Of a DNA stretch of 64,000 bases, positions 3,962 through 55,457 are shown piece after piece. Under the pieces are notes generated by a model. It was not told the DNA's origin. It worked only from the letters and a program-made list of their open reading frames with translations, and searched no databases. How positions within the stretch are numbered: position 1 is the stretch's first letter; each line of letters starts with the position of its first letter. A program made the position numbers and the translations under genes. Location: positions 159,507 to 223,506 of IMG/VR virus record IMGVR_UViG_3300038465_000091; one strand, written 5' to 3'.

Positions 3962-5653
3962 ATGACGCCTAGAAACCCACTCCTACAAAAAAGAGCACTC
4001 GACGAAACCATGGTCATGTGGAACGACCCTGATTACGCCGAAAATCAACACCACTCCGATCCCAGCTACACCACTCAAAACGGCAAGGATTACGCGGGAC
4101 GCGGCACCACTGAGAATGAAGAGGGTGCGCTTAAAGATGGCATCCCCGCAGGTCTCCTGTCGGTTGAACTCGGCAAAGAAGCCGCAGGCAGTACGGACCC
4201 CGTTGACTTGTTAAGGCGAGCGGCGGATACCCTGCAAGGATATTGCGCCGAGGTCAATGGCGACATGAACGATAGCTTGGCGACGGAGATAGAGGAGTAT
4301 CTCGCCCAACAGTCTCAACCCAAGCAAGCCGATACGGGCAACCCTCACGTCACTACGATGCCAAGTGCGCCAGCCCCAGTCGATCCCGATAACGCAACGT
4401 TCTTTAAGGAAAGTGAACCGAGTTCGCCGTTCACTGACGCTGAAGAAAAAATTAACGCCGCAGCCGCAGGTAGTGGTTTCCACTATGTGGGTCGCGTTAC
4501 AGACGGGACTACACTGTGGTACAGGGGGAAAGACGAACGTTTGTCGTTTGACCCTAAGACTGGAAACGTCACGCACCTGAGGGACGGGAAAGTTGTATCG
4601 GAATGCCCCATTAACCAACTCGGACGTATTAAGTCTGCCGCCGATAGCTTTCATGCGGCCCTGAAGAAGGGACTTAAGCAGGGCGCAATCCGCCCATCTC
4701 CCCACACTGTGTTTGAAAACAAAGTTGACAATGCCACGGGGAAACAGCCCATCGCACCCACGGAACCTTCCGATGATGAGGTGATGAAAGCTCAAAAAAC
4801 CCTCGAAAACGCTGGGGTTGGCGATCAAATTGGTGTCAACGCTTCGAAGACCGTCGAGGTTAAGGAGCTTGGAACCAAGATGAGCGGCTTCACTGGCGGC
4901 GGGCCGTTTAGCTGCATGGATTGCGTGCATCGTACTCCGCACTCTAAGAACGCCAAGGGCGAAGAAGTTGATTCGTGCAAGCATCCCGATGTGATGGCCG
5001 ATCCCGAGCTTGCAGATCGCAAACTCCCTGACGGAACTATCGAAGTTGACGCTGATGATTGCTGCCGTTTTGTAAGGCCGACGAAGAAAGAATCCGAGAA
5101 GGAAGCGGCGGTCACCAAGACCTACGGCACTGGCACACCTCCGGGCGGAACGCCCAATGATCCGAGTATCGACGATGAAGACGCGGACGAAGGGAAGACC
5201 TCTAGCCAAAAGCGAGCGGATGTTGATATTCACGAAACGCCGAAGTTCCTCCCGCCTCGCGATGACATTCGTCGGCACCTCGACAAGGATGTGCAGGATG
5301 AAATCACCGATGAGGTGATGGAAGGCGTGAAAGACGCATCGGAAGAGGGCGAATACTACTTGGATAAAGTTCGTGACATGAAGAACGAGGCCAAGGAAGC
5401 GTTCATGCAGGATGGTTCCATGCAACAAGAGGCTCAGGATGCGGGTATGAGCATGGAAGACCTGTGGAAAGAAATCGGTGGGGAGTTCACCGAGAACTAC
5501 TATATTTCGGCCTACTCCAAGCAGGGGTCGATTGCGGTTGAAGAGGGGTTTAAGTGCCCTAACTGCAAGAGCCTGAAGGGGAAACCAGTCGAAGATGGTT
5601 TGGACGACACGGTAAGCTTGCGAGAGTGTTTAACTTGCGGGAGCTTTTACTAA
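3962..5653 (+). CDS. Mosaic putative internal head protein (K-x-A delimited modules, Zn ribbons)
   Basis: 563 aa with QKRA, GKEAA, PKQAD, FKES, IKSAA, EKEAA, QKRAD, VKDAS, SKQGS separating unrelated segments; CxxC motifs (CMDC; CPNC...CLTC). Confidence 0.6.
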   Translation: MTPRNPLLQKRALDETMVMWNDPDYAENQHHSDPSYTTQNGKDYAGRGTTENEEGALKDGIPAGLLSVELGKEAAGSTDPVDLLRRAADTLQGYCAEVNGDMNDSLATEIEEYLAQQSQPKQADTGNPHVTTMPSAPAPVDPDNATFFKESEPSSPFTDAEEKINAAAAGSGFHYVGRVTDGTTLWYRGKDERLSFDPKTGNVTHLRDGKVVSECPINQLGRIKSAADSFHAALKKGLKQGAIRPSPHTVFENKVDNATGKQPIAPTEPSDDEVMKAQKTLENAGVGDQIGVNASKTVEVKELGTKMSGFTGGGPFSCMDCVHRTPHSKNAKGEEVDSCKHPDVMADPELADRKLPDGTIEVDADDCCRFVRPTKKESEKEAAVTKTYGTGTPPGGTPNDPSIDDEDADEGKTSSQKRADVDIHETPKFLPPRDDIRRHLDKDVQDEITDEVMEGVKDASEEGEYYLDKVRDMKNEAKEAFMQDGSMQQEAQDAGMSMEDLWKEIGGEFTENYYISAYSKQGSIAVEEGFKCPNCKSLKGKPVEDGLDDTVSLRECLTCGSFY

Positions 5654-5681: not shown

Positions 5682-6584
5682 ATGCCTTTTACGAAGATAG
5701 CTAACGCTGCGTTACAAGAACCAGTCATCGCACCCGAGGACTGGATCAAGCTGCATGGAAAGCACGTGTTCGGGCAGAAGTCCGCCTCGGGCTCCGCAGC
5801 CGCCGCTACCTTCAGGAAGTCCGCTGACACCTCGAAATACCTCTTGTCCCACTGCACCATTATGGCAAGTGTGATGGTCGAGGCCGACCCTTACGATTAC
5901 CTAATCAAGCCAGAATGCAGTCACCTCGTCAACAACAACGATGACGCATGGACGAACGAAGTTCTGAAGCTCAGCCACAGCAGCTTTGTTGGTGCTTTCA
6001 ACTTCGTGGAACATTTCCAGAATTCCAAGTATGCGAAGGGTCACATTCTCGACGCCATTCTTCGCAAGATCAAGTTGAACGGCGATGGCTCTGTGTGGGT
6101 CTATTTCTGCGATATCCTTGTCGCCACGGACCTCGGACACGAGAAGCTGATTGACGACATCCGCAGCGAAAAGGTCAAGTACCTGAGTATGGGCTGCGTG
6201 ACCGACCTCGTAATTTGCAGCTATTGCGGTGCTCGCGTCACCGATCAAAATACCTACTGCAACCATCTGTCGTATCAAAAGGGCATGTTCCTGACCGACG
6301 ACGATGGCATTGCACGTCGTGTCGCCGAGCTTTGTGGGCACAAGACAATGGAAAACGGCGGCGTGAAGTTTGTGGAAGCTTCGTGGGTTGCTACACCAGC
6401 ATTCCCCGGGGCTGCAAAACGTAACACGGTCTCCGAAGAGTGGGAAGGACCCCGCACCAAGTACACCAAATCGTCCACCGCTGGGAAGATGGCAAAAATT
6501 GCCAGTGTGAATGATGAATTCGAAACCCTTAATCTAGGTGATGCGTTAATGAACGCGAATTTGCACGGAAGGTTGACTCGGTAA
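5682..6584 (+). CDS. Prohead (capsid maturation) protease with Zn-binding insert
   Basis: VNNNDDAW...FNFVEH...KGHILDA...YLSMGC...CSYC...CNH...FVEASWVATPAFPGA fits the HK97/herpes-type Ser-His protease pattern; sits directly upstream of scaffold, decoration and capsid genes. Confidence 0.75.
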   Translation: MPFTKIANAALQEPVIAPEDWIKLHGKHVFGQKSASGSAAAATFRKSADTSKYLLSHCTIMASVMVEADPYDYLIKPECSHLVNNNDDAWTNEVLKLSHSSFVGAFNFVEHFQNSKYAKGHILDAILRKIKLNGDGSVWVYFCDILVATDLGHEKLIDDIRSEKVKYLSMGCVTDLVICSYCGARVTDQNTYCNHLSYQKGMFLTDDDGIARRVAELCGHKTMENGGVKFVEASWVATPAFPGAAKRNTVSEEWEGPRTKYTKSSTAGKMAKIASVNDEFETLNLGDALMNANLHGRLTR

Positions 6585-9043
6585 TGGCCGATCAGAAGAC
6601 AACGCACTACAATGGCTACACTCTGAGTTACGCCAGTCAGCATGAGTCAGTGATTATTAAGTTGGACGGCAAGAAAGTTAAAACAGCACCAAACCTAGAA
6701 AAGGCGAAGGCGTGGGTGAATCAAGCGCCGGGAAGCTTTAGTAAGGGCGAGAAAAAGGCTGGTACGCTAATGGCAAAAGAAATAGTTCATTGCACAAAGT
6801 GCGGCAACATGATCGAGTCGCTCAAGCCTGAAAAATGTGAGCATTGTGGTGGCAAAGCAAAAGTTAAGAAGGGCTCTATGAAATCAAAACTAGCAGCAGC
6901 AAAAGCGGCACTTGACCGCAAGCAGGCCGATTTGGACGCTATTGACGACCAGATCATGGGTCTGGACTCTGGTATCCCAATGGATGCCCCATCTACCCCC
7001 GAATTTGACCTCCTCACTGCGAAGCGCGAAGAGCTTGAAGAAGAGATTCGCACGATGCGCGAAGGCGTTCAGTTTATCTCCGAGTGGGAAAAATTGAAGG
7101 GCGGACAGTGGTCGGAAGGTATCAAATCCCAGTTGGACGGCCTCGACTCAGAAATCGCCAATATAGCTGGCAGCGAGGGTGCCGTTGAGTCGGGTATGGA
7201 TATGGGAGCCCCGATGGGCGATCCCCTAGCCGCCCCGCCAGTTCCCGAAGCCCCAGTAGCACCAATGGGAGACGTGGCCCCTGAAGCCGCCCCAGCACCA
7301 GAAGTGGCACCCGATGCCGCCGCACCAGAAACACCCGCACCTGCCTTGGAACCTCCGATGGCGAGCGCAAAATCCGCAGTAAATAAGAAAAATAACTATC
7401 AAACCTCTCAAAAGAGGGGCAATATTGCCTCTCCCCAGATGAAAAAGGAAGGCTCCAACATGGCAAATCCTACAGCTACCAAGCCCTCGAACTTGAAAGA
7501 GAAGCTTGCTGAACTGAAAACGAAGCGCGAGACGATCAAGAGGGAAGCACAGGTTCGCACCGCTGCGGCGTATACAATCGCCAACACGATGCTGCCGGGT
7601 GCCCCCGTCGAAAAGCGTCAGGCATTCGCCTCTTCGCTACTCCAAGGTAACGACACCAAAGCCCTCGTTGCTGCCCTCCGTCAAACCGCGATCAACGCCC
7701 ACTACTCCAAGGTCGCCGAACAATTCAAGGAAGTCCACAAAGTCGAACTCAATGATCTCCTCGAAGACCCGTCCGTTCTGAAGTCCGAGCGTTCGGCTGT
7801 CGAAAAGGAAATCAAGGGTGACGCGAAGTCGGCTACCTCGAAGAAGGCCGATGACCGCAAGGACGCAGGTCCGCAGACCGAGACGTACAACGACGGTCGT
7901 GGTTGCGGCGGCGGGACTCACTCTGAGCCGAAGGAAATGGAAGCCTCGAAAGCTGGCGACCGTCCCGACGCTGGCGAGAAGCCCGGTCAGACCGTGAACC
8001 TCAGCGACGGCAAATCTGCCGCCGCAAAGAAGTCAACATGCAAGGACGGCGAGAAATGCGCGGGTTGCGAGAACTGCAAGTCCGCCGCCAAGAAAGCCGC
8101 CGAGAAGAAATGCGACAAGTGCAAGGGTGAATGTAAGTGCGCTTCCAAGGTCGTTGCCAAGGCAAAGAAGGCCGACGAGCCGCCGATGGACGCCCCCGCA
8201 CCAGATGCAGGCGCACCGCCGATGGAAGACGAAATGGGCGATGCAGGTGCTCCGTTGGATGAAGTTCCTCCGATGGACGGTATGGAAGGTGAAGCTCCAG
8301 TCGATGACGCTGGCGCGATCCTTACCGACGAGAAGAAGATGGTCGTTCAGGAGGAAATCGACACCGTTAAGGATGCCGTTCAAGCTCTTGAGCAGGAACT
8401 TCTTGAAGAGAACGAAGAAGAGATTCCGCTTGCTCTTGAAGAAGGCGAACCCTCCGAAGAAGAGCTTGACCTTTCGTCCGTGTTCGATCAGGGCGAGATG
8501 GAAGACAAAGCCGCTTCGCTTGCCAACGAAGGTGAAGATCACACCGCTGGCGACGACGGCGATGGTAACTTCTTCGCCCCAACATCTGCCGCAGGCATGG
8601 AATCAGTGCTTGACGACAGCGGTATGCAGGTAGCCAGTATCGAGAGCTATTTCGATATGCAGGGCTCCGATGCCGACCCACTGTACAGCTTGATCGCATC
8701 TGAAACCAAGGAAGCAGCATCCGTCGCTGGTTTTGACGTGCTTGAGTCCTTCACTGGTGAAGTGGCGAACAAGATGAAGCAGGACACCACTGGCGAAGCC
8801 CGCGACAACGAAGGCGACCACGACGAAGACCTCTTCGTCGAAGCAATGAAGGACATCAAGCCTGAGGAACAGGGTGCAAAGCGTACCCCGCAGGATGCAC
8901 GTCCCGAGTTGCAGGCTCCGAAGTCCGCAGCCGCAAAGACCGCAGCCAAGGCTCCCACAGGCAGCATCAAGCGTGTCCGCCCTGTCGTAGCCTCACCGAA
9001 AGCCGTTGACATCGCTACCGCGTTGTTCGGCTCCGAAGAGTAA
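6584..9043 (+). CDS. Capsid scaffolding / prohead core protein
   Basis: Coupled to the protease gene (TAATG); very acidic, coiled-coil and low complexity; canonical position between protease and capsid. Confidence 0.65.
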   Translation: MADQKTTHYNGYTLSYASQHESVIIKLDGKKVKTAPNLEKAKAWVNQAPGSFSKGEKKAGTLMAKEIVHCTKCGNMIESLKPEKCEHCGGKAKVKKGSMKSKLAAAKAALDRKQADLDAIDDQIMGLDSGIPMDAPSTPEFDLLTAKREELEEEIRTMREGVQFISEWEKLKGGQWSEGIKSQLDGLDSEIANIAGSEGAVESGMDMGAPMGDPLAAPPVPEAPVAPMGDVAPEAAPAPEVAPDAAAPETPAPALEPPMASAKSAVNKKNNYQTSQKRGNIASPQMKKEGSNMANPTATKPSNLKEKLAELKTKRETIKREAQVRTAAAYTIANTMLPGAPVEKRQAFASSLLQGNDTKALVAALRQTAINAHYSKVAEQFKEVHKVELNDLLEDPSVLKSERSAVEKEIKGDAKSATSKKADDRKDAGPQTETYNDGRGCGGGTHSEPKEMEASKAGDRPDAGEKPGQTVNLSDGKSAAAKKSTCKDGEKCAGCENCKSAAKKAAEKKCDKCKGECKCASKVVAKAKKADEPPMDAPAPDAGAPPMEDEMGDAGAPLDEVPPMDGMEGEAPVDDAGAILTDEKKMVVQEEIDTVKDAVQALEQELLEENEEEIPLALEEGEPSEEELDLSSVFDQGEMEDKAASLANEGEDHTAGDDGDGNFFAPTSAAGMESVLDDSGMQVASIESYFDMQGSDADPLYSLIASETKEAASVAGFDVLESFTGEVANKMKQDTTGEARDNEGDHDEDLFVEAMKDIKPEEQGAKRTPQDARPELQAPKSAAAKTAAKAPTGSIKRVRPVVASPKAVDIATALFGSEE

Positions 9044-10982: not shown

Positions 10983-11942
10983 ATGGCAAATCTTTCTCGT
11001 ACACAACAGCAGACGGCTATGCTTGGACAGTTGCTCAAGACCGCAGGTGGTCGTCAAAAATTAGCGGCGTCGTTGGGACCGTCCCTCCGTCGTCGTCGTG
11101 ACTATATGAGCATTGCTCGTAAGGCTCTTATGGTCGAAACTCTTCCCGATGGCGCACTCCCCATCTACGACAAGGAATTCGATGTTAGCGCGATGACTGT
11201 GGGCTCGACCCCCGGCTCGTCTTTCGTTGAAGCCTTTGTGGTCGGTGAAGAAGGCGGCGACATTGTGCGTGTGACCAAGCCAAAGCGTGTCACGGTTCCG
11301 ACGTTTGAAATCGTGTCCAACCCCATGATCCCGATCACCCAGATCAAGGAACGTCGTTTCGATCTCGTTGCTCGCTCACTCAACCTCGCAAAGGCTGAAG
11401 TAGGCGCGGCAGAAGATGGTTACGTGTTCAATCTGTTTGACGGTGTTGCGGCGGGCGCAGTCGGCCATGCACCAAACGATCCGGTTTACAACCCCGACAT
11501 TCCAATCAACGCCCCCATCGACATCAACTCGCTGGCGGATGGATTTGGTCAGGTTGCACGCCACGATCTGTCGGTTGCTTTCATCTTCTTCAATCCTCGC
11601 GATTACACGGATTTGTTGAAGTGGACGCAGCAAAACATCGACCGTGAAACACAGCGCAAGCTGTTGAAGACGGGCGTCATGGGCTATCTCTGGGGCGCAA
11701 CGCTCCTCCAGTCTCGTAAGGTCGGCTACGGCTGCATCTATATTCTGGCGGACGCTGAGTTCCTCGGCGTAATCCCAGAACGTATTCCGTTGACCGTGAT
11801 GAGTGCCGACCGTCCTGATTTGAGGCAAATCGGATTCTCGATATTTGAGAATTTGGGCTTCCTCGTCTTCAATCCTTCAGGCGTTCAGCGGTTGACCGTT
11901 AACGGTCGCTTCAACGCGGCTGCCAACTTCGGCGAGAACTAA
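10983..11942 (+). CDS. Major capsid protein (HK97 fold)
   Basis: AAGGAG RBS; RRDYMSIARKALMVETLPDGALPIYDKE...RVTVPTFEIVSNP.I...KERRFD...AAEDG...GYLWGA...GFSIFENLG; followed by a strong terminator. Confidence 0.88.
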   Translation: MANLSRTQQQTAMLGQLLKTAGGRQKLAASLGPSLRRRRDYMSIARKALMVETLPDGALPIYDKEFDVSAMTVGSTPGSSFVEAFVVGEEGGDIVRVTKPKRVTVPTFEIVSNPMIPITQIKERRFDLVARSLNLAKAEVGAAEDGYVFNLFDGVAAGAVGHAPNDPVYNPDIPINAPIDINSLADGFGQVARHDLSVAFIFFNPRDYTDLLKWTQQNIDRETQRKLLKTGVMGYLWGATLLQSRKVGYGCIYILADAEFLGVIPERIPLTVMSADRPDLRQIGFSIFENLGFLVFNPSGVQRLTVNGRFNAAANFGEN

Positions 11943-12520: not shown

Positions 12521-12694
12521 ATGCCAAACCGTAATAAGCCTACCAGCCTACAGACTGAGCCCGCATACCCAGACCATGAAACAGTGTGCTTCTGTATGGG
12601 TGCCCCCGATTTAACCTGTCATTCCGCATCAAGTCGTTGCCTCATTGAGGAGCCGCACCTGATCGTGGGATGTGGAGAATTTGACCATGAATGA
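12521..12694 (+). CDS. Small Cys/His-rich hypothetical protein (57 aa)
   Basis: ATG directly after the previous stop; MPNRNKPT...CFC...CH...C...H...CGEFDHE*. Confidence 0.35.
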   Translation: MPNRNKPTSLQTEPAYPDHETVCFCMGAPDLTCHSASSRCLIEEPHLIVGCGEFDHE

Positions 12695-12732
12695 AGTTAT
12701 TCATCTACCTAACCATTAGGTGGGGGCGTCTT

Positions 12733-13629
12733 GTGATTGTCTACCGCATAACCAACAAAATAAACGGCAAGGTTTATATCGGCAAGACCGTTAAGCCGCT
12801 TACCAGACGTTGGCAACACCACAAAAGAGATGCTCGTGGTGAGAGTCAAGTGTACTTTCATCGCGCTATCCGCAAACACGGTCCGGAATCTTTTATAGTT
12901 GAGCCTGTCTATGTAGCCAAAACTGAGAAAGAGTTGGCTGCGATGGAGACGTTCTTCATTGTCCTGCATCAGTCTTACAAACCAGAAAATGGCTACAACG
13001 GAACTCTTGGTGGGGATGGTATCGGACTTCTCACGGACGAAACCCGTCAACGGATGCGTGATGCTAAAACTCCAGAAATTAGGCGTCGTATGAGTGAGCG
13101 GATGATGGGTGTTCCTCTCTCCATAGAGCATTGTAGGCGCATCGGGGATTCGAAACGTGGTGAAAAAAACCCGCATTGGGGCAAACCACGTAGTGAAGAA
13201 ACCCGTCGCAGGATTGGGAAGGCTCAATTAGGAAAGAAACTATCCCCCGAGCACCGCGAAAAAATAGGTAAAGCGCACCAAGGAAAGGCACTGTCAGAAG
13301 AACATCGTCTTGCCTTGAGTGAGGCCCATAAAGGGTTGGTGTTCTCCGATGAACACCGCAAAAATCTTAGTCAAGCTCTCTCGGGGGAGCGAAACGTTGG
13401 GTACGGCACGAAGTGGGTATCCAAAGATTCCGAAACAATCAGGATTCCTTCCCATCTTCTCGATTCTTATGTAGAACAGGGCTGGACGGCGGGAAGGGCG
13501 TCTTTGTTGGGCAAGAAACCACCTAAAGAACGGATTGAGAAGGTGTTGGCGTACTGGACTCCCGAACGTCGAGCACAGCGGTCGGAGGACTATACTATGC
13601 GACGGGAGAATCAAACACAATGTTCGTAA
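12733..13629 (+). CDS. GIY-YIG homing endonuclease with NUMOD3 repeats
   Basis: IVYRITNKINGKVYIGKT...GYNGTLGG plus repeated S.EHR.KI/LS.A.KG units. Confidence 0.9.
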   Translation: MIVYRITNKINGKVYIGKTVKPLTRRWQHHKRDARGESQVYFHRAIRKHGPESFIVEPVYVAKTEKELAAMETFFIVLHQSYKPENGYNGTLGGDGIGLLTDETRQRMRDAKTPEIRRRMSERMMGVPLSIEHCRRIGDSKRGEKNPHWGKPRSEETRRRIGKAQLGKKLSPEHREKIGKAHQGKALSEEHRLALSEAHKGLVFSDEHRKNLSQALSGERNVGYGTKWVSKDSETIRIPSHLLDSYVEQGWTAGRASLLGKKPPKERIEKVLAYWTPERRAQRSEDYTMRRENQTQCS

Positions 13630-20800: not shown

Positions 20801-21037
20801 ATGTCGAAAAAGATAGCAGCACAAGATGCCACAGCAATGAACAGCCTGTATGCTGGCGAACTCGGTCGCCTCGGCCTCAAGGTCGCACAGAAGGACGCAA
20901 AGGACTCAGCCGCAGGGCAGTCTCACGACCCTCAGGCTTTCGCCGACCACCAAAATTATATGGATATCCTCGAATCGGTTCTGAAGGAAGACGAAAAGAC
21001 GGACGGCGAAGCCGCTAACGACCCGATCACCGACTAA
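20801..21037 (+). CDS. Small putative head protein (78 aa)
   Basis: GGAG RBS, upstream late-type motif, SKKIAA and LKVAQ sites. Confidence 0.65.
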   Translation: MSKKIAAQDATAMNSLYAGELGRLGLKVAQKDAKDSAAGQSHDPQAFADHQNYMDILESVLKEDEKTDGEAANDPITD

Positions 21038-21046
21038 GGAGGAAAG

Positions 21047-24000
21047 ATGAAGCTGGACGCCACACAAGCGGCGGCTGCCAAGCTTTCCCACCTAATCGAG
21101 CCCGGGCGAACCGTCTATTCCACAGACGGCCACGCCTATAGGGTCTTGTCAAAGATCGCCGCTGGCGGCTCCTTGAGCTTCCGACTTGCGAACCTTCAGG
21201 GACAGCCGGTTCCAATCCCCGCAGACTTCTCCCCGATTGACGGGGCTCGGATGCGTTTCGCGTCCTTCCTGAAGTTCGCATTCAACAAAGACCTCACTGC
21301 GATTGTCAACTCACTGATTGAACAGGCGGGGCTCCCCACTGACCCAGCGATGAACTGGGCTGGGTGGTTTCAAAAGGTCTATGGCGAAATCCTAGCATCT
21401 GTTACCCCCAACTTTGATCTCCAAGACGAGATCATGTACAACACCGTCATTAAGCTCCTGATGATGCGTAAGGACAAGGACGGAAAAACACTTCTGGAAA
21501 ACGCTGCCGACAAAATTTCAGGTTTGTCCAGCGGCATTAACAAGATAAAGCGTCAACTTCGTGATCCGAACTTGACTCCAGACGAAAAGAAGACGCTAGA
21601 GAATCGACTCCACTGGCAGGAAAAAGTTAAGGCTGATCCTGTGGAGAAACAAGTCAGCAGCCTCCTGAAGAAAACTTTCGAGTATTACGCACGACATCAT
21701 GCTCGTGTGGATGCGAAAAATTACGCCTATTCGGTGCATACCCCCAGCCATCGCCTCGAAACGGAAAATATCGAAGACGTTGCTATCGAACAACCCACAC
21801 CATCTGGAGAGGGAACGTATAATATCCTTGATACCGAGGAACACGGCGTGGCTCCGGGCGTCGGACTGGGCGAGTCCGAACGCGACATCATGCAGTTCAT
21901 CGATCAATTCCAAGAGTGGGTGAGGGGCAAGGAGACCCCGAAATCCGCTCCTAACTATGCCGAATTGCTCAGGATTTACTGGGATCAGGCACAGCGAATT
22001 GACGATGTTAAGATCAGCGATCTGACTCAAGAGTGGATTCGCCGCACAGGTTTGAGCTTTGACTCCCTGAAGCAGTATCGGGATAAGCTCGGCATCCTGA
22101 TTCGAGATTTCGTCTACGAGAACAAAGTCCAACTGGGCAACTCCTACAAGTTCGTGGACTTGCTAAAGCACATGTTCCCGCCGCCAAAGCAAAAAGCACG
22201 TCCCGCCAAGGCTTCGTCCGACCACCATCACGACCGAACCGAATGCAGAAAGTGCGGCAATGTCCAGACTTGCCGTTGCCCTGCGACCAAGGTCACGTCC
22301 TATGTGGCTTCCTGCGACAACTGCAAGACGGCGGATGGTTTGGAAGCACGAGTGCTTGATCCGAACTGTCCTGAATACAAAAAATACGCCGATGATTTGA
22401 TCCGTCGCTTCGGTCAGACATCGCAGGTCTCCGAGATGCTGGGACAATTCGAAGATGAGCATTTCCCCACTTGTGTACACTGCCAGCAATACAATCAGGA
22501 TTGGCGGGCAGGTAAGGTATCAGCGGCAAAACCCAAGTGCCCCCATTGTGGCTCTGACGATTACGGCTTGATGCCCACGGACTTCGAGACCGCCAAGTGC
22601 AATGGTTGCGGCAAGAACTGGAATCATGGCATCGTCAAGGGTATCAATGATCCGAAGGAAGCTGCTCGCACGGCGGATGATGAAGGAGGGGGTAAAACGT
22701 GCGAAAATTGTGGGAGTTATTACGGTGGGTATACATGTCTTAATTGTGGGCGAAAAAAGAAGCTGGAAGAAGAGGTAGATCGTACCAGCAAGGAACTCAA
22801 GAAGTTCCCCAAGGGACCAACAGGCATGACGCCCGACGATGTGAAGGCTACTCCCGAATGGCAGGCGGCTAAACGTAATTACGGTCAAGCCTTCGCCAAG
22901 CTGCGAGAGTTCAATTCCAAAAAGTGTGCTGCCGATGATCCGACTCGTGACACCCTTGACGAGACGCTGAAGTATGACAACCCAGACAAGGACACCAAGG
23001 GGTTCCACGACCCCGCCGACCTCGGTCAATGCGCCTGTGAGTGGGATGAATGTCCGCTGGGTCACCAAGCGGGTGGGTGCCAGAATCCCGCAGCCCACAT
23101 GCTTGAAATCTATGGATACAAAACCCGCTACTGCCAGCCATGCACCGACGCAACTATCGAGTACATCCGATTGGAACAAGGCACTGGCGATCCCGATGAC
23201 ACGGTTAAGATTCTGTCCTCCGCACATACTGCTGGTGCCCCGTACTGCGACGGTTGTGATCGTCTGAAGGCAAACTGCATCTGCGAAGGCTGCGAGTGCC
23301 CAGAAAATAAAAACGCAGGCAAGTGGGGCGATAAAATCAAGAAGATGGAAGCTCGACGTGGCGAGTTCATCGAGAAAACTCTTAAGAATGCCGTAGGGCC
23401 AACGGAAGAGGATGATCTTGAGATGGCTAGGCGTGGTCCGATTCAATACGAGGAACTACCCGAAATGGAAACCCGAATTCGCCCACGAGAAGAACAGTCG
23501 AAATTTCCGACTCCTCGACCTACTACACGGCGTAAGGAGGGGATGCTCGGTCATGATTTTGTGGATGCCGATCAGCAAGCGATTCGCCCCGACATTACGC
23601 CGGGTGACACTGGGCGCTTACCTCATGGACGCACGCAGGGATCAGTTAAAGAATCTGCGGAACTTGCTGGTCGCGGCGGGGATAAAGATGACGTGCGCGG
23701 TGCGGGCGATCTGTGGCGTGAAGAGTTTTACCAAAGCGGCAATGCGCCCCCAAAGATTGCGACATCAGGTAAATGGAAAGTTCTTCTGCGGGATTCCAAG
23801 GGGAATCAGCGTGAGCAGGAGGTTTCAGGCGTAAATTACGGCTCTGCCGAACGTGCTGTGAGAAAATATATGAAGAATGGTGAAAGGGTTGTGTCGATGA
23901 CTATCGCAAGCAAGACGGCTGCCCCCGCTCCTGCGGCACCCGCACAGGCACAAGCACCAGCGCCCGCCCCAGCACCAGCAGCCACTCCCGCCCCTCCAGC

Positions 24001-26950
24001 GCAAGCGCCAAGCGCGAACACGGTAGTTGCCCCACCGCCCGGAACGCCGATTGCTCTTCCCTCGGGACAAGGAGAAGATACACCGGAAAAAAGAACAGTT
24101 CCGCCAGAAATCCCGAACAGGAAGTACCACATGACAAGTAAAAATTCCGCACTTAAAACCGAACAGAATACGCCAGAGATGGAAGCTCAGGTAGCTCAAC
24201 TGGCACAAACGAACCCGCTCACGGAGATTCACGAGAACTGCAACCCGTACTTCGAGCACGGGCAATGGTGGGTTGTCTGCGGGCCGTGCGGAGCCACTTG
24301 GTCGGTCGTTGATGTGGGTCAGTTCATCGGAGATGAGGGCGACATCGACCTTGAAGAGATTGATAACGGTGACGGTTCTTGTGCGGAGAATTTCCACGAG
24401 TCTGCCGATCACAGCAGCCCACGTCAGGGCTTCATCTATCAGGCGGAAATGTGGTGCCCGACTTGTGCGAAGGAGATCGCCGCCGACATTCAGAAGAACT
24501 ACCCTAAGCAGGTCCCCGCCGATCCAACGGATGAGTATTCTTATGATTCCGACAGCTACCCGAAGGGACCGTTCTTCGAGGAAGAATCAGACGCTCCTGA
24601 GCACTGCGCGGGCTGCCACATTTTCCTTGAGAACCCTCTGACCACGCATGGTCAGGAGTACATGCAGTCGATGGTTGACGAAGCTCTGGCGAAGGGACGC
24701 GGCGAAGAGCCGCACATCAAGGAATGGATGGACTTTTACGGCTATCATCCTGACACTGAGGGAGCCGAAGACGAACATGAGGCGTCCGCCGCTTCCGACA
24801 GAATCAATGCGATGCCGCAGCGTGGCAAGCCAAAGACTCCCGAAGAGTTGGGGCTGGTTGAGAAATCCGATACGGAACTCCGTCTTGAGGGGATTCCTCC
24901 GCGTCCTAAGAAAACCGCCGATGGCGCTTCGTTGCTTGAACCAGAAGTTAGCTTCGAAGATAAACCAGACCCCTTGCTCGACAACAGTAATAATTTGCAA
25001 AACTACAGCTATGCACCGCAGAAAGACACAACAGATAGTAGGGACACGGCCACGCTGGACGACAACATCGAAATTTTGAAACGTTACGGCTATGCCCTTT
25101 TCAGTGGTGGAAAATCGGGTGGGAAACAATTCTGGAAAAGTCCCATTGGAACTGTAGTTATCATGTCCACCAGCGGTGAGTGGATGTTTGGTGCGGACGG
25201 TACCAGAGGAACGACCAGCACGGATTTAGACAGTAAGCTTTTGAAATACCACCACAAAATGGTCCCAAAAGCGGGGGCGTCCAAAACCGCCGAAATTGAT
25301 ATGGGTCAGCTTGAGAGCGTGCAGGATCGAAAAGATCGCCTGAGCAAGCCCGACAAGAGTCCGATGTACGGCGTGACACTTCTTCGCGAACTTTCAGCCC
25401 CCGGCATTCCAAAGGGTGAAGTGATCGTGTTCGGTTATTACTACCCAGATGGGCAATGGGGCAAGCAGCAGCTTCAATGGTGGACAACGATGGCGAAGAC
25501 CGAGTATGATAGCACCGTCACTCAGGTCAAACGTCGCAGTCGCGGTACGAATCAGGAAAAGTCAACGGCCCTGTACGAGTCGTTGAAAGGACGTGGTACG
25601 GCGGTTGAGCCGGGTACGTCGTCTGACGCTATCATCGAGCAATTCAAGACGCAGAAGGAATCATCCATGGAAAACAAACAGGCTGCAATCGCACAACCCA
25701 CGTCTGGCGAGGACGAAGGCTATTACGTCAAGGTCACCTACACTAAGGGCGGTATTGATCTGAGCCCGACTGAGAATCTTCTAAGGGAAGTCGCCGAGGA
25801 GCAAATGCAGGATGAAAGCGGCAACTCGACTTATGAGTTCGCCCACAACATTGAGCTTGACGACATCTGGGAAATGATGGAGGATTTCTTCACCAATGGC
25901 TGGGAGAAAGTAAATCCCGAGGATATTGGTGCGCTAACTGACGGAGAAATCTTCTCCGATCCCAACGGCAACGTCTACTGGCATGAGCGGTATCAGATCG
26001 AAAGCATGACCGATGAACTGAAGGCAGGCAACACGGTGTTCATGCAGTACGGCGGCAATCTGTTCGATGAGGAAGATGAAGAAACGCCTGCTCCCGATCC
26101 GAACCAGATGAACCTCCCACTCCAGTCTTCCAAGAAGGAAGCCACGGGCGAGATGAGTCAGTCCGAGGCTGATGACCGTGAGGCATGGCCGATGCACCAC
26201 GCTATCGCTGACGCTCTGGGCGGCACGGTCAAGGCTTTTGACCAGTATCAAGGTCCGTACGTTCTTGTGGGCTCTGAGGCTCGCGGACAGGGCACCTATG
26301 CTCCCGCAATCCCGATGAAGGGTACCGTGCGCCTCTGGGTACAGGCGGACGAGGGTAGTGACGGGGCATTCCTGACCGTCTACAACGAAGACAACGATAA
26401 AGTTAGCGAGCCGTTCCATTGGGAAGACATGGAAGGCGCGGTCAATGCCGCCATGAGCGTAATGGGCGATGAGCCCGAGACAATCGAAGCCTCCACCAAG
26501 CAGGCGGAACTTGACATCCCCAAACCGGACAGTTGGGGGTGTACTTGTTCAGATAAAGGAGCACGCGGACAACACAAGTCCAATTGTCCTAAGGCTCCGA
26601 AGCAACGTGGCGAGTACCACGGCGCGAGTAAGCAAGCAGCGCCCGGCGACGGTGGACTACAACGCGACGTGCAGAACCAGTACGAGAACCACCCCCTGAT
26701 CGAAATGCTGTGGGGTTCCCTGAAACGTGACCCAGCGAACAAAGATCGCGTCCAGACGGCATGGGGCACCAAGACGAAGCAGGGTTTGGTGCTCAGTGTA
26801 GCTCGCGCCATGAAGGAAAGCCCCGTCTCGGGTAAAGAAAGCAGTCAGAAATGCAAATGCGGCAAACCGACAGCTAAAGGCGATCACCGCTGCGAGGACT
26901 GCCGCTCAAAACAGCATTCCGAGGCAGAAAAAGCGACTGGCGTAGAATAA
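21047..26950 (+). CDS. Giant mosaic polyprotein 1 (1967 aa), putative virion cargo
   Basis: AAGGAGG RBS; about 390-aa helical N-terminal domain followed by more than 20 short unrelated modules (many CxxC) separated by KTA/KEA/KQA/KES/HES/HEA. Confidence 0.75.
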   Translation: MKLDATQAAAAKLSHLIEPGRTVYSTDGHAYRVLSKIAAGGSLSFRLANLQGQPVPIPADFSPIDGARMRFASFLKFAFNKDLTAIVNSLIEQAGLPTDPAMNWAGWFQKVYGEILASVTPNFDLQDEIMYNTVIKLLMMRKDKDGKTLLENAADKISGLSSGINKIKRQLRDPNLTPDEKKTLENRLHWQEKVKADPVEKQVSSLLKKTFEYYARHHARVDAKNYAYSVHTPSHRLETENIEDVAIEQPTPSGEGTYNILDTEEHGVAPGVGLGESERDIMQFIDQFQEWVRGKETPKSAPNYAELLRIYWDQAQRIDDVKISDLTQEWIRRTGLSFDSLKQYRDKLGILIRDFVYENKVQLGNSYKFVDLLKHMFPPPKQKARPAKASSDHHHDRTECRKCGNVQTCRCPATKVTSYVASCDNCKTADGLEARVLDPNCPEYKKYADDLIRRFGQTSQVSEMLGQFEDEHFPTCVHCQQYNQDWRAGKVSAAKPKCPHCGSDDYGLMPTDFETAKCNGCGKNWNHGIVKGINDPKEAARTADDEGGGKTCENCGSYYGGYTCLNCGRKKKLEEEVDRTSKELKKFPKGPTGMTPDDVKATPEWQAAKRNYGQAFAKLREFNSKKCAADDPTRDTLDETLKYDNPDKDTKGFHDPADLGQCACEWDECPLGHQAGGCQNPAAHMLEIYGYKTRYCQPCTDATIEYIRLEQGTGDPDDTVKILSSAHTAGAPYCDGCDRLKANCICEGCECPENKNAGKWGDKIKKMEARRGEFIEKTLKNAVGPTEEDDLEMARRGPIQYEELPEMETRIRPREEQSKFPTPRPTTRRKEGMLGHDFVDADQQAIRPDITPGDTGRLPHGRTQGSVKESAELAGRGGDKDDVRGAGDLWREEFYQSGNAPPKIATSGKWKVLLRDSKGNQREQEVSGVNYGSAERAVRKYMKNGERVVSMTIASKTAAPAPAAPAQAQAPAPAPAPAATPAPPAQAPSANTVVAPPPGTPIALPSGQGEDTPEKRTVPPEIPNRKYHMTSKNSALKTEQNTPEMEAQVAQLAQTNPLTEIHENCNPYFEHGQWWVVCGPCGATWSVVDVGQFIGDEGDIDLEEIDNGDGSCAENFHESADHSSPRQGFIYQAEMWCPTCAKEIAADIQKNYPKQVPADPTDEYSYDSDSYPKGPFFEEESDAPEHCAGCHIFLENPLTTHGQEYMQSMVDEALAKGRGEEPHIKEWMDFYGYHPDTEGAEDEHEASAASDRINAMPQRGKPKTPEELGLVEKSDTELRLEGIPPRPKKTADGASLLEPEVSFEDKPDPLLDNSNNLQNYSYAPQKDTTDSRDTATLDDNIEILKRYGYALFSGGKSGGKQFWKSPIGTVVIMSTSGEWMFGADGTRGTTSTDLDSKLLKYHHKMVPKAGASKTAEIDMGQLESVQDRKDRLSKPDKSPMYGVTLLRELSAPGIPKGEVIVFGYYYPDGQWGKQQLQWWTTMAKTEYDSTVTQVKRRSRGTNQEKSTALYESLKGRGTAVEPGTSSDAIIEQFKTQKESSMENKQAAIAQPTSGEDEGYYVKVTYTKGGIDLSPTENLLREVAEEQMQDESGNSTYEFAHNIELDDIWEMMEDFFTNGWEKVNPEDIGALTDGEIFSDPNGNVYWHERYQIESMTDELKAGNTVFMQYGGNLFDEEDEETPAPDPNQMNLPLQSSKKEATGEMSQSEADDREAWPMHHAIADALGGTVKAFDQYQGPYVLVGSEARGQGTYAPAIPMKGTVRLWVQADEGSDGAFLTVYNEDNDKVSEPFHWEDMEGAVNAAMSVMGDEPETIEASTKQAELDIPKPDSWGCTCSDKGARGQHKSNCPKAPKQRGEYHGASKQAAPGDGGLQRDVQNQYENHPLIEMLWGSLKRDPANKDRVQTAWGTKTKQGLVLSVARAMKESPVSGKESSQKCKCGKPTAKGDHRCEDCRSKQHSEAEKATGVE

Positions 26951-28642: not shown

Positions 28643-29299
28643 TTAACGGCTTACCCACACCACTTCGGTATTGGTTTGAACCATTCCCTTATGCGTCACC
28701 AGCAGGCGGAAGGGTAACCACCTTGCTCCTCTGTTCTCGCACACAATTGCCTGTCCCTGACGCTCGCGGCACCAGCCGCCCAGATGTCTAAAATCCATGT
28801 GCTGGAATCCGTTGTACCACTTTCCAACCTTTTGATACGGAGGATCGACAAACCAAGTCGCTTTGCGGTTGGGAATGTCCGCATAGCTTTGCTGAAACAC
28901 CTGCCAGTGTCGCACCTTGTAGAGATTAGCGGCGATCCAAAGCTTCTGTTGATTCCAGCACACACGCTGGGTTGCTGTAAGCTTGGGTCGGGTTGAGGCT
29001 GGGTTGAGATGGTAGCCGATAAGGTATCGTTCCTCAGTCGATAAAGACTTGAACTCGGTGAGGGTCTGTTTGGGTTGAATGTCCGGAAGGCTGAGGATGT
29101 CCTTCTTCGACGCAGAGATCAAGTATTTCCATGTCGCTACGATCTTGGGATTGCAGTCGAAGAGCATCACGTTGCGTTCCCAATGATCGCCGTGTAAAGA
29201 GTAGCCCGCCGCCCCCGCAAATGGCTCGATGAGGGTGTCGAATTCTGGCGGTGCGTACAGTGGAGCCAACCTCTTTTTACTCCCGTAGTAAGAGAACAT
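28643..29299 (-). CDS. DNA adenine methyltransferase (Dam/D12-like)
   Basis: FSYYGSKKRLA, IEPFAGAAG (motif I) and FVDPPY (motif IV). Confidence 0.88.
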   Translation of the reverse strand: MFSYYGSKKRLAPLYAPPEFDTLIEPFAGAAGYSLHGDHWERNVMLFDCNPKIVATWKYLISASKKDILSLPDIQPKQTLTEFKSLSTEERYLIGYHLNPASTRPKLTATQRVCWNQQKLWIAANLYKVRHWQVFQQSYADIPNRKATWFVDPPYQKVGKWYNGFQHMDFRHLGGWCRERQGQAIVCENRGARWLPFRLLVTHKGMVQTNTEVVWVSR

Positions 29300-29303
29300 A
29301 GGA

Positions 29304-29861
29304 CTAATCGGGCTGTACTAGCCGCATCCCTTCTTCAACCATGTACCAGAACAACAGCTTGGAGTTGATGGTAAGGCGTCCCGCACCGCCAGCGCCGTAG
29401 CTTTGATAGCTGGTGCAAATCTCGGGAAGTTGGAACGGTGGGACGGGGAATGTCACACGGTATTCGTGTCCCCAGCGGTCCTCCCAGCAGCGAACGGAGG
29501 CGCTGTTTACGGGAGGTACGGGTAAGCCTGTCTTGTCAAAATATTCAGCGGCGAAATTGACTCCCGCTTTGTCGCCTAATTCAATAATCAGCGAGCCTTC
29601 CGCCAAGATGAAATCCAAAAACTCTTTGTTTGCGCCCTTCTTAAACAGGGCGACAAGTTTTTTGCCGACTACCGCACTGGTGACTTTAGGTGGTGGGGTG
29701 TATGTTGCGGCTTGTTCAGGTGTGGCGACAGACAAGAAGTTGCCCCGTATGGCTTTCTTGCCAATCTCGAACTCCACTACAACGTTGCCGTCCCGAAGCT
29801 TTTTAACAGGTCCCACTCCAAAGGCGGGGCTGTAGACCAAGGTATCGACCTGAAATGTCAT
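29304..29861 (-). CDS. Hypothetical protein (SH3/Tudor-like N-terminus), paralog of 30880..31584
   Basis: VYSPAFGVGPVKKL..G.VVVEF; RWGHEYRVTF...LFWYMVEEGM; leaderless TATAAT-N6-ATG. Confidence 0.7.
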   Translation of the reverse strand: MTFQVDTLVYSPAFGVGPVKKLRDGNVVVEFEIGKKAIRGNFLSVATPEQAATYTPPPKVTSAVVGKKLVALFKKGANKEFLDFILAEGSLIIELGDKAGVNFAAEYFDKTGLPVPPVNSASVRCWEDRWGHEYRVTFPVPPFQLPEICTSYQSYGAGGAGRLTINSKLLFWYMVEEGMRLVQPD

Positions 29862-29900
29862 ACCCCCATTATACCAGCCCGGGGACCAAAATGGCTAGTT

Positions 29901-30860
29901 TTACAGAAATTTGTTGTATCCACCCGTCAGGGTGTGGTCGCAGCGGTATTTCGCAATGACGTTGTATTCGGGCGTCAATTCGACCCCCAAAACCTCATCC
30001 CACCCCGCCATTAAGCAACCGATTATTTCGGACCCTGAGCCAGAGAAGGGGACGATGATCCTGCGGGTGCCCACGGACGCAGGCGGCAGTAGCAGCTTGG
30101 CGATGTAGGTGGTGAGTGAGACGGGCTTGAGCGTGGGGTGGTCATTGCGTGTGCCCTCGGGCATTCCCGCGTTACGCTCTGCGGGGTTGCTCTTGGCCGC
30201 ATAGAAGAATCTCGCTTGATCCCCGACCATGACCGCCGCCTCTTCATCCAGCAGCACATTTGTTGGGTAGCGGCCCGTGCGGGCGGGTGTCACCATATCG
30301 TTACGGATGAAGGTGCCGAGGCGAGATTGCCCCGCTTTCGTTTCGGGTAGCTCTTCGTCGCCGACCCGCGAGCCCTCAATGTTCAGTGCCCCCGAGCCGT
30401 GTTCGAGGATAGTGTCTACGTACTTTCCCTCGAAGGATTTCTTGAAGCAGACGATGGGTTCCCAGCCGGGTTTGAGCATACTCGGCCTGTAGCCTGTCCA
30501 CGTGGCGGCATTGGCCGCGTCCCCCCTCTTGCCGATCATCTTCCCGAGATCAGGGGCCTTGGGGAACCCTGTGCCGTACAGCCATGTCATCGTGTCCCAG
30601 ACCTCGAAGCCAGCGTCTTCCATGCCGACTGCCAGCCTGTGCCATGTGCGCGTGCCGCCGAATACCAAGGCGAGTGCTCCGGGCTTGAGGACGGGCAACA
30701 GAGACGCCCCCCATGCCTCGAATTGAGCATTGGTGTCCCATTTCTTGCCCATAAAGCCTAGATCGTAGGGGAAGTCGGAAAAGAGAGCGTGGAACTGAGG
30801 TCCCGAGTAGGACTTAGCCCACTCGACCACATCAGAAGTTACGAGTTTGTAGGTTGCCAT
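29901..30860 (-). CDS. DNA N4-C/N6-A methyltransferase (beta class)
   Basis: SDFPY.LGFMGKKWD (motif IV variant), WLYGTGFPK, HPTLKP, VPFSGSGSE (motif I). Confidence 0.88.
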   Translation of the reverse strand: MATYKLVTSDVVEWAKSYSGPQFHALFSDFPYDLGFMGKKWDTNAQFEAWGASLLPVLKPGALALVFGGTRTWHRLAVGMEDAGFEVWDTMTWLYGTGFPKAPDLGKMIGKRGDAANAATWTGYRPSMLKPGWEPIVCFKKSFEGKYVDTILEHGSGALNIEGSRVGDEELPETKAGQSRLGTFIRNDMVTPARTGRYPTNVLLDEEAAVMVGDQARFFYAAKSNPAERNAGMPEGTRNDHPTLKPVSLTTYIAKLLLPPASVGTRRIIVPFSGSGSEIIGCLMAGWDEVLGVELTPEYNVIAKYRCDHTLTGGYNKFL

Positions 30861-47439: not shown

Positions 47440-47477
47440 GCAAACAAAGAACTTAAGGAACGGTACAGGGTAGAATA

Positions 47478-49732: not shown

Positions 49733-49733
49733 C

Positions 49734-55453: not shown

Positions 55454-55457
55454 ACCT

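What the first reader, a model, noticed from the sequence alone, without database searches (positions are those of the whole stretch)
21047..22210. N-terminal domain of polyprotein 1 may be a virion-packaged sigma-factor-like protein
Seen: a helical domain of about 390 aa. It has a region-2-like stretch (LQDEIMYNTVIKLL...LLKKTFEYYARHHAR), an acidic linker (YNILDTEEH...ESERDIMQFIDQFQEWV) and a region-4-like HTH (YAELLRIYW...KISDLTQEW...GLSFDSLKQYRDKLGILIRDF), ending at AKAS. Inference: an ECF-like sigma or transcription factor released by cleavage and injected to start early transcription.
Basis: inference. Interest (0 to 1): 0.6.

Follow-up and report, generated by a model that had tools for sequence, protein, structure and literature searches.

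The report
Conserved head of giant phage protein
The first 391 residues of a 1,967-residue jumbo-phage protein are a real, widespread, undescribed phage-only domain; it looks only faintly like a sigma factor, and no test here reached significance for that reading.

Summary
The ORF (21047-26950, +, 1,967 aa) and its N-terminal domain are real. The window is the end of a 223-kb jumbo-phage record related to Tunturiibacter phage Tunturi_5.

Residues 1-391 define a family of at least 140 clusters, seen only on phage or metagenome contigs. The domain almost always sits at the N-terminus of proteins of about 400-2,100 aa with hypervariable, Zn-ribbon-rich tails.

A confident AlphaFold2 model (pLDDT 88) shows four parts: a Tudor-like barrel, a helical bundle, a conserved acidic segment (NILDTEEH), and a second helical bundle with an HTH-like pair.

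Sigma identity is not established:
- Pfam, PHROGs and PDB profile searches find nothing.
- hhalign against an ECF alignment scores no better than control segments, while Tunturi_5's genuine sigma scores 99%.

Context supports a late, probably virion-associated protein. The gene always follows a conserved 66-80-aa partner gene, downstream of the capsid gene. Module boundaries carry a K-x-A-[AED] motif that is 4-9 times enriched in five proteins from the window's capsid/structural-gene regions, suggesting prohead-protease processing.

Best reading: the constant anchoring module of a processed, packaged polyprotein. The sigma-like reading remains possible (about 0.17).

The parts
20801..21037 (+). 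Conserved small partner gene (78 aa, acidic) directly upstream
   Evidence: Orthologues at 47-51% identity lie directly upstream of the family gene in Tunturi_5 (gp344), L016 and L017 (alignment A4). A 66-72-aa gene occupies the same position in L149, L150 and an ENA contig. No PHROG or PDB match.
21036..21042 (+). Shine-Dalgarno-like AAGGAGG, 4 nt before the ATG
   Evidence: Read directly from the sequence.
21047..26950 (+). Whole ORF, 1,967 aa (P0001): a mosaic of conserved small modules and lineage-specific insertions
   Evidence: Full-length homologues P0005-P0012. Module-wise conservation and indels.
21047..22219 (+). Conserved N-terminal domain, aa 1-391 (the finding)
   Evidence: Alignments A1-A3. 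140 representatives found by profile search. AlphaFold2 model at pLDDT 88.
21083..21244 (+). Tudor/SH3-like beta-barrel, aa 13-66
21245..21739 (+). Helical bundle I, aa 67-231. Holds the family's most conserved motif (AGLPxDxxMNW; W104 invariant) and a P0001-specific insertion at about aa 160-189
21740..21859 (+). Conserved acidic segment, aa 232-271 (family median net charge -9; NILDTEEHA motif)
   Evidence: Low-to-medium pLDDT with two short strands.
21860..22174 (+). Helical bundle II, aa 272-376, with an HTH-like helix pair at aa 323-358 (nt 22013-22120; TGLS turn)
22175..22219 (+). Basic tail and boundary motif, aa 377-391 (PPPKQKARPAKASS)
   Evidence: Invariant in close homologues and followed at once by indels. 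Family-wide the domain ends in a basic run plus P-A-x-A-S-(S), often followed by L-K-[ITL]-A-[EAD].
22244..23299 (+). Cys-rich region, aa 400-751: 30 of the protein's 45 cysteines, mostly CxxC pairs, so likely Zn-ribbons
   Evidence: The CPHCG...CNGCG module at aa 498-521 shows 96% column conservation. Weak Zn-ribbon Pfam hits in relatives.
5682..6584 (+). Head maturation (prohead) protease gene, the candidate processing enzyme
   Evidence: phrog_18299, E 4e-15.
10983..11942 (+). Major capsid protein gene, which places the locus in the late structural operon
   Evidence: phrog_2522, E 1e-42. 71% identity to the Tunturi_5 major head protein.

Best explanation
Residues 1-391 are an autonomous, phage-only module. 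It consists of a Tudor-like barrel, a helical bundle, a conserved acidic NILDTEEH segment, and a second helical bundle with an HTH-like pair. It forms the constant N-terminal head of a family of giant, hypervariable, Zn-ribbon-rich proteins.

I think the protein is made late and built into the virion, most likely inside the capsid. The constant module would provide incorporation or anchoring, in the way the MuF/SPP1-gp7 domain does for MuF polyvalent proteins, possibly together with the conserved 78-aa partner. The variable C-terminal modules would be cargo. The prohead protease would cut the polyprotein at K-x-A-[AED]-type boundary motifs, the first of which lies just after this domain, so the domain would be freed as a protein of about 43 kDa and could leave with the DNA.

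Shown: the domain, its family, its fold, the synteny, the partner gene and the motif enrichment.
Inferred: packaging, cleavage and ejection.
Not settled: what the freed domain does in the cell. RNA-polymerase or nucleic-acid contact is the leading guess.
For: - Architecture: 140 family representatives, with the domain at the N-terminus in nearly all, and protein lengths of about 400-2,100 aa. Some members are barely longer than the domain (for example P0056, 425 aa), so the domain works on its own.
- C-terminal parts are a mosaic with indels even between 60%-identical homologues.
- The gene lies on the same strand downstream of the major capsid gene in every locus with enough context (window; Tunturi_5; L017; L149; L150). 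It is always preceded by a conserved 66-80-aa gene.
- Tunturi_5 gp345 carries the full domain (E 2.8e-68) and is annotated 'virion structural protein'.
- Boundary motif: the domain ends family-wide in P-A-x-A-S-(S), often followed by L-K-x-A-[EAD]. Similar motifs sit at indel hot spots along P0001.
- K[TIQELV]A[AED] occurs 9 times in P0001 against 1.0 expected (0 of 200 within-protein shuffles reach 9). 31 of the genome's 53 hits fall in five proteins, among them the 819-aa protein just after the prohead protease and the 563-aa protein just before it.
- Precedent: jumbo-phage prohead proteases cut many head and ejection proteins (SPN3US; PMC10052503, PMC7411985). Phage proteins with a constant N-terminus and variable C-terminus are known to be head-associated (MuF toxins, PMC5576092) or injected with the DNA (polyvalent proteins, PMC7824862).
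Against: - There is no proteomic evidence. The Tunturi paper reports no mass spectrometry, and I take the gp345 label to be computational.
- There is no sequence or fold similarity to MuF/gp7.
- The gene is not next to a recognisable portal gene.
- A 390-aa, three-subdomain module is more elaborate than any known capsid-targeting signal.
- The specificity of this protease is unknown, so the motif could mark flexible linkers rather than cut sites.
- The family is absent from phage G and LR745208, which share the capsid type, so it is not a core structural gene.
- C-terminal modules have almost no recognisable effector domains. The only one found is a DMP19-like DNA mimic in a single relative.
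Confidence: 0.4

Rival explanations
1. The domain is a very divergent sigma-70/ECF-type factor, or a sigma-like RNA-polymerase-binding factor. Bundle I would act as sigma-2, the acidic segment as the linker and bundle II as sigma-4, perhaps helped by a CarD/RapA-like Tudor barrel. It would redirect host RNA polymerase after being freed from the polyprotein.
For: - In exhaustive structure searches of two independent models, 9-12 of the top 50 rows are sigma factors or sigma chains of RNAP complexes.
- The mapping is colinear. Sigma-2 (SigW, SigJ, sigma-E region 2, AlgU, RpoE) maps to aa 85-236. Sigma-4 (CnrH, SigD4, Thermus sigma-A, sigma-S) maps to aa 271-376. SigL aligns over 158-162 of 174 residues spanning both halves.
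- The best local hhalign alignments fall on the expected places: region 2.1-2.2 for bundle I and the region 4.2 HTH for bundle II.
Against: - Foldseek finds nothing at E<0.001.
- There is no Pfam Sigma70 hit for P0001 or among the families listed for the 82 members, and no PDB profile hit.
- hhalign P values (0.03-0.15) match those of unrelated control segments (5 of 19 windows at P<=0.06). The bundle I alignment vanishes with the 9-sequence alignment (P 0.61). A genuine phage sigma scores 99% with the same profile.
- The lineage already has a canonical sigma: Tunturi_5, PF04542 at 2.6e-11.
- The gene sits in the late structural operon, not among regulatory genes.
Confidence: 0.17
2. The domain is an external structural anchor. 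It would attach a long, variable appendage (neck whisker, head fibre or baseplate-associated fibre) to the virion, as the conserved N-termini of tail fibres and fibritin do.
For: - In the window, Tunturi_5, L016, L017 and an ENA contig, the gene is flanked by fibre-like or Ig-like (Big_3_5) genes.
- A constant N-terminus with a hypervariable C-terminus is the usual layout of receptor-binding fibres.
Against: - The C-terminal parts are Cys-rich Zn-ribbons, short alpha/beta modules and Pro/Ala-rich or acidic linkers. They show no beta-helix, collagen-like or coiled-coil fibre signature, and no fibre family hit.
- In L149 and L150 no fibre genes are nearby; there the gene sits a few small genes after the capsid gene.
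- The N-terminal domain shows no sign of the trimeric coiled coil typical of fibre anchors.
Confidence: 0.12
3. The protein is a non-virion late protein. It would be an assembly factor, scaffold-like protein or DNA-organising protein that acts in the infected cell, with the Zn-ribbon modules binding DNA, and is never packaged.
For: - It is co-oriented with morphogenesis genes.
- Phage G, a distant capsid relative, has a roughly 35-copy Zn-ribbon expansion, proposed to be transcription factors or structural DNA-binding proteins (PMC7824862).
- The domain has HTH-like and Tudor-like subdomains.
Against: - Hypervariability and module shuffling between close relatives fit conflict or cargo proteins better than assembly factors.
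- Enrichment of the boundary motif, shared with proteins encoded beside the prohead protease, points to processing in the prohead.
Confidence: 0.1

Closest known systems
ECF (group 4) sigma-70-family factors, e.g. E. coli RpoE, B. subtilis SigW, M. tuberculosis SigL
   Different: No significant sequence or profile similarity. The domain has an extra N-terminal Tudor-like barrel and extra helices (aa 66-93 and about 141-198), and its 'linker' is conserved. It is fused to about 1,600 further residues and encoded in a structural operon. RNAP binding is untested.
MuF polymorphic toxins and phage 'polyvalent proteins' (PMC5576092; Iyer et al. 2017 as cited in PMC7824862)
   Same: A constant N-terminal domain followed by long, variable, shuffled C-terminal modules. 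The genes are phage-encoded, in or near the head morphogenesis genes, and the proteins are proposed to travel with the DNA.
   Different: The N-terminal domain is unrelated to Phage_Mu_F/SPP1 gp7 (no Pfam hit). The C-terminal modules are nearly all unknown rather than recognisable toxins or enzymes. The gene is not adjacent to a recognisable portal gene. The carrier is a lytic-type jumbo phage rather than a temperate phage.
Prohead-protease-processed head and ejection proteins of jumbo phages (SPN3US, phiKZ; PMC10052503, PMC7411985) and T4 internal proteins/Alt
   Same: Large proteins encoded near head genes, with a short recurrent motif that would let the prohead protease cut them into pieces carried in the capsid.
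   Different: Cleavage has not been shown. There is no sequence similarity to those proteins.
CarD / Mfd-RID / RapA / UvrD Tudor-type RNA-polymerase-interacting domains
   Different: The scores are in the noise range for a fold this common. There is no CarD_TRCF Pfam hit for P0001, and the helical part is far larger than CarD's.

Membership tests
Sigma-70 family (ECF group) | Sequence or profile match to region 2 (PF04542) | tested here: not met
   No hit for P0001, and none among the families listed for the 82 family members at E<=1. hhalign of bundle I against my ECF alignment gives P 0.034 with 82 sequences and 0.61 with 9. Control segments reach 0.02-0.06. The positive control, Tunturi_5 sigma, scores 99%.
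Sigma-70 family (ECF group) | Sequence or profile match to region 4 (PF04545/PF08281) | tested here: not met
   No Pfam hit. The best local hhalign alignment does fall on the RpoE region 4.2 HTH, but P is 0.026-0.15, within the control range.
Sigma-70 family (ECF group) | Three-dimensional sigma-2 and sigma-4 folds in that order | tested here: inconclusive
Sigma-70 family (ECF group) | Binding to core RNA polymerase (beta-prime clamp helices, beta flap) and promoter-specific initiation | not testable with these tools
   Needs a pull-down and in vitro transcription with host (Acidobacteriota) core enzyme.
CarD_TRCF / Tudor-type RNAP-interacting domain | Profile match to PF02559 and a Tudor-like barrel that contacts RNAP beta | tested here: inconclusive
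MuF polymorphic toxins / polyvalent proteins | N-terminal Phage_Mu_F (SPP1 gp7-like) domain | tested here: not met
   No such hit for P0001 or among the families listed for the 82 members.
MuF polymorphic toxins / polyvalent proteins | Constant N-terminal domain with variable, shuffled multi-domain C-terminus | tested here: met
   Domain is N-terminal in nearly all of 140 representatives, whose lengths span about 400-2,100 aa. Module gain and loss occurs between close homologues.
MuF polymorphic toxins / polyvalent proteins | Recognisable effector, toxin or anti-defence domains in the C-terminal part | tested here: not met
   12 long relatives and P0001 were scanned. Only weak Zn-ribbon hits and one DMP19-like domain (P0045, E 1e-5) were found.
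Prohead-protease-processed head/ejection proteins | Recurrent short motif at cut sites, shared with other head proteins of the same phage | tested here: inconclusive
   A candidate motif is enriched 4-9 fold in five proteins and located at module boundaries. Actual cleavage was not tested.
Prohead-protease-processed head/ejection proteins | Physical presence in purified virions | not testable with these tools
   Only a 'virion structural protein' label on Tunturi_5 gp345, which I take to be computational.

The most novel reading that the evidence does not exclude
The domain is a previously unrecognised, extremely divergent sigma-like module (Tudor barrel + sigma-2-like + sigma-4-like). It would be carried inside the capsid as part of a polyprotein, cut free by the prohead protease, and injected with the DNA to capture host RNA polymerase for the first phage transcripts. 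That would be a third route to early transcription, beside injected single-subunit (N4) and multisubunit (phiKZ) virion RNA polymerases.
Probability: 0.12. Interest if true: 0.85.

Novelty: new variant of a known kind. Interest (0 to 1): 0.45.

Why it matters
The domain defines a large protein family (at least 140 clusters at 50% identity) of soil jumbo phages, and no Pfam, PHROG or PDB entry describes it. It is confidently foldable and has a cultured representative (Tunturi_5 gp345 with its Tunturiibacter host), so it can be studied at the bench.

If it is the anchor of a processed, packaged polyprotein, it gives a handle on what these phages deliver into Acidobacteriota along with their DNA. 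It would also reveal a new prohead-protease motif. If the sigma-like reading proved right, it would be a new way for a phage to start early transcription.

As it stands, this is a well-delimited new domain family with an unproven function, not a demonstrated sigma factor.

Tried and rejected
- Pfam and PHROGs on P0001, on aa 1-400 and on 82 family members: nothing relevant.
- PDB sequence-profile searches with A2 and A3: nothing, or chance hits.
- Foldseek against PDB and BFVD with both models: no E<0.001.
- ESM Atlas by shape (TM<=0.26) and by language-model features: no usable hit.
- Complex prediction with E. coli beta-prime 215-345 and aa 60-391: no verdict (score 0.21, mark 0.32). This is not evidence either way. 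The Acidobacteriota references RPOC_ACIC5 and RPOC_KORVE were not accepted together with A3.
- The search for related loci with A3 failed for lack of a conserved stretch. With A2 it found only close relatives in viral contigs and nothing in prokaryote genomes.
- The word search with E. coli RpoE returned only close orthologues, so the ECF alignment was built from gammaproteobacterial loci instead.
- The large gene next to the family gene in L017 is not a split-off C-terminal part of P0001; it is unrelated and fibre-like.
- Net charge of the HTH-like bundle does not discriminate: family median -3, against 0 (range -5 to +7) for ECF region 4.
- Promoter and terminator scans around the gene are at shuffle level.

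Full report
**What the window is.** The window is the last 64 kb of a 223.5-kb IMG/VR virus record estimated at 71% complete. Its major capsid protein (10983-11942) is 71% identical to that of Tunturiibacter phage Tunturi_5, a 309-kb myovirus of Acidobacteriota, and 35% identical to that of Bacillus phage G (PMC11924767). On the + strand upstream of the finding lie a head maturation protease (5682-6584), the capsid gene, a GIY-YIG homing endonuclease, and fibre-like genes. Only genetic code 11 was used.

**Checking the observation.** ORF 21047-26950 is open for 1,967 aa and starts behind a strong AAGGAGG box. Eight other full-length proteins (1,858-2,136 aa) share 44-62% identity over aa 1-391. 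Right after an invariant KARPAKASS they diverge by large indels, so the domain boundary is real.

**The family.** A profile of the domain finds 140 representatives of 50%-identity clusters, 116 of them at E<=1e-10. The domain is N-terminal in nearly all, on proteins of about 400 to 2,100 aa. It is not found in 185,579 prokaryote genomes, nor in phage G or the 485-kb phage LR745208. The cultured phage Tunturi_5 has a full copy, gp345 (E 2.8e-68).

**Fold.**
- With 10 sequences the model was mediocre (pLDDT 72). With 82 family members it is confident (pLDDT 88.2, pTM 0.69).
- It has a small beta-barrel (aa 13-66), a helical bundle (67-231), a mostly non-helical acidic segment (232-271) and a second helical bundle (272-376). 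Helices 323-334 and 338-358 in the second bundle form an HTH-like pair.
- The most conserved positions are W104 (invariant) within AGLPxDxxMNW, D127/E128, L138, L150, L207, F211, F288, the acidic NILDTEEH motif, and TGLS at the HTH-like turn.

**Is it a sigma factor? Sequence and profile evidence says no.**
- There is no Sigma70 family among the Pfam hits of P0001 or among the families listed for the 82 members, and nothing in PDB profile searches.
- I built a 42-sequence ECF alignment from E. coli and gammaproteobacterial loci.
- hhalign of the family against it gives P=0.15 (probability 0.4%), against P=0.26 for the reversed control.
- Domain by domain, bundle I aligns to region 2.1-2.2 (P 0.034) and bundle II to the region 4.2 HTH (P 0.026).
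- But 5 of 19 unrelated C-terminal windows of the same protein reach P 0.02-0.06. With the 9-sequence alignment the bundle I match disappears (P 0.61) and bundle II gives 0.078.
- The same ECF profile recognises the genuine sigma of Tunturi_5 at 99% probability, E 3e-18.
- So there is no profile signal beyond background.

**Is it a sigma factor? Structural evidence is suggestive but weak.**
- Foldseek finds nothing at E<0.001 in PDB or BFVD. CarD and Mfd recur at E 0.4-1.2.
- Sigma-2 domains (SigW, SigJ, sigma-E region 2, AlgU, RpoE) always fall on aa 85-236. Sigma-4 domains (CnrH, SigD4) fall on aa 272-376. ECF SigL aligns over 158-162 of its 174 residues across both halves, at rmsd 26-28 A.
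- I therefore treat the sigma resemblance as a lead that is neither confirmed nor refuted.

**Context.**
- In every locus with enough flanking DNA the family gene lies on the same strand downstream of the major capsid gene. In L149 and L150 it is a few small genes after it. In the window, Tunturi_5, L016, L017 and an ENA contig it lies among fibre-like or Ig-like genes.
- It is always immediately preceded by a 66-80-aa gene. Its products are 47-51% identical between loci whose large proteins share only 24-35% (window 20801-21037). This is a conserved two-gene cassette.
- Tunturi_5 gp345 is labelled 'virion structural protein'. The Tunturi paper annotated ORFs partly with Phold and reports no mass spectrometry, so I take the label as computational.
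- The lineage has a canonical sigma in Tunturi_5. None is seen in the incomplete record that holds the window.

**Processing.**
- Family-wide the domain ends in a basic run plus P-A-x-A-S-(S), often followed by L-K-[ITL]-A-[EAD].
- Along P0001 and its homologues, similar motifs (ASKTAA, GASKTAE, SSKKEAT, SKQAAP, DPKEAA) coincide with indel hot spots between modules.
- In the whole 223-kb record, K[TIQELV]A[AED] occurs 53 times in 192 ORFs, and 31 of these fall in five proteins:
  - P0001: 9 against 1.0 expected.
  - The second giant protein, 58086-63773: 9 against 1.5.
  - 55365-57545: 4 against 0.46.
  - The 563-aa protein just before the protease: 3 against 0.33.
  - The 819-aa protein just after the protease: 6 against 1.4.
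- At most 1 of 200 within-protein shuffles reaches the observed count.
- This pattern is what one expects of a prohead-protease recognition motif, as in SPN3US, where the prohead protease cuts head proteins, many of which are packaged and ejected (PMC10052503, PMC7411985). Cleavage itself is only inferred.

**The rest of the protein.** It is a mosaic.
- A Cys-rich stretch (aa 400-751) holds 30 of the 45 cysteines, mostly as CxxC pairs.
- There are Pro/Ala-rich and acidic linkers, and small conserved modules.
- A 235-aa insertion (about aa 1290-1525) is absent from most of the eight full-length homologues.
- Pfam recognises almost nothing in P0001 or in 12 long relatives, apart from weak Zn-ribbon hits and one DMP19-like DNA-mimic domain.
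- Iyer et al. noted a roughly 35-copy Zn-ribbon expansion in phage G and suggested transcription factors or structural DNA-binding proteins (PMC7824862).

**Verdict.** I rank the explanations as follows.
- Most likely (about 0.4): the domain is the constant, autonomous N-terminal module of a late-expressed, probably capsid-packaged and protease-processed polyprotein. This works like MuF-type polyvalent proteins, but the domain is not a member of that family.
- Second (about 0.17): the sigma-like RNA-polymerase-binding reading. It is compatible with packaging.
- Less likely: an external fibre anchor (0.12) and a non-virion late protein (0.10).

The decisive experiments are virion proteomics of Tunturi_5 and RNA-polymerase binding assays with the isolated domain.

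Noticed in passing
window 20801-21037 (+): An unannotated 78-aa acidic ORF lies directly upstream of the giant gene. Orthologues (47-51% identity) or same-sized genes precede every family member examined, so the two genes form a conserved cassette. No known family or structure matches it.
   Followed up: partly
window 3962-5653, 6584-9043, 21047-26950, 55365-57545, 58086-63773: The motif K[TIQELV]A[AED] is 4-9 times over-represented in these five proteins, which hold 31 of the genome's 53 occurrences. It sits at module boundaries of the giant protein. It is a candidate prohead-protease site, different from the Glu-ending motifs I recall for T4 and phiKZ.
   Followed up: partly
window 58086-63773 (+): A second giant ORF (1,895 aa) carries only phrog_1915-type unknown domains and shows the same boundary-motif enrichment.
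   Followed up: no
window 12691-13629 (+): A GIY-YIG homing endonuclease gene (phrog_314, E 7e-43) is inserted shortly after the major capsid gene, overlapping the start of the next ORF by 10 nt.
   Followed up: no
L147:1078-1986 (-), Tunturi_5 record 151918-152826: Tunturi_5 encodes a canonical sigma-70-family protein (PF04542 at 2.6e-11, PF08281 at 2e-5). No counterpart is detectable in the 71%-complete record that holds the window.
   Followed up: partly
window 22244-23299 (aa 400-751 of the ORF): A dense run of CxxC pairs (likely Zn-ribbons) includes a near-invariant CPHCG...CNGCG module at aa 498-521. It recalls the Zn-ribbon expansion reported for phage G (PMC7824862).
   Followed up: no
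P0045 aa 1166-1263 (a family member from elsewhere): One relative carries a DMP19-like DNA-mimic domain (PF14300, E 1e-5, above the cut-off) in its variable part. This hints that some C-terminal modules act against host DNA-binding proteins.
   Followed up: no
window 21524-21640 and 21719-21760 (aa 160-198 and 225-238): The window's copy of the domain has two insertions (about 30 and 13 aa) that homologues lack. The first extends a helical hairpin in bundle I and is modelled with high confidence.
   Followed up: no
window 28643-30860 (-) and 45695-53028 (+): There are two DNA methyltransferase-like genes on the minus strand just downstream of the giant gene. Further on is a cluster of glycosyltransferase and nucleotide-sugar epimerase genes.
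   Followed up: no
P0088, P0106, P0113 (family members from elsewhere): In three representatives the domain starts about 300 residues into the protein rather than at the N-terminus. This could be an N-terminal extension or a partial duplication.
   Followed up: no
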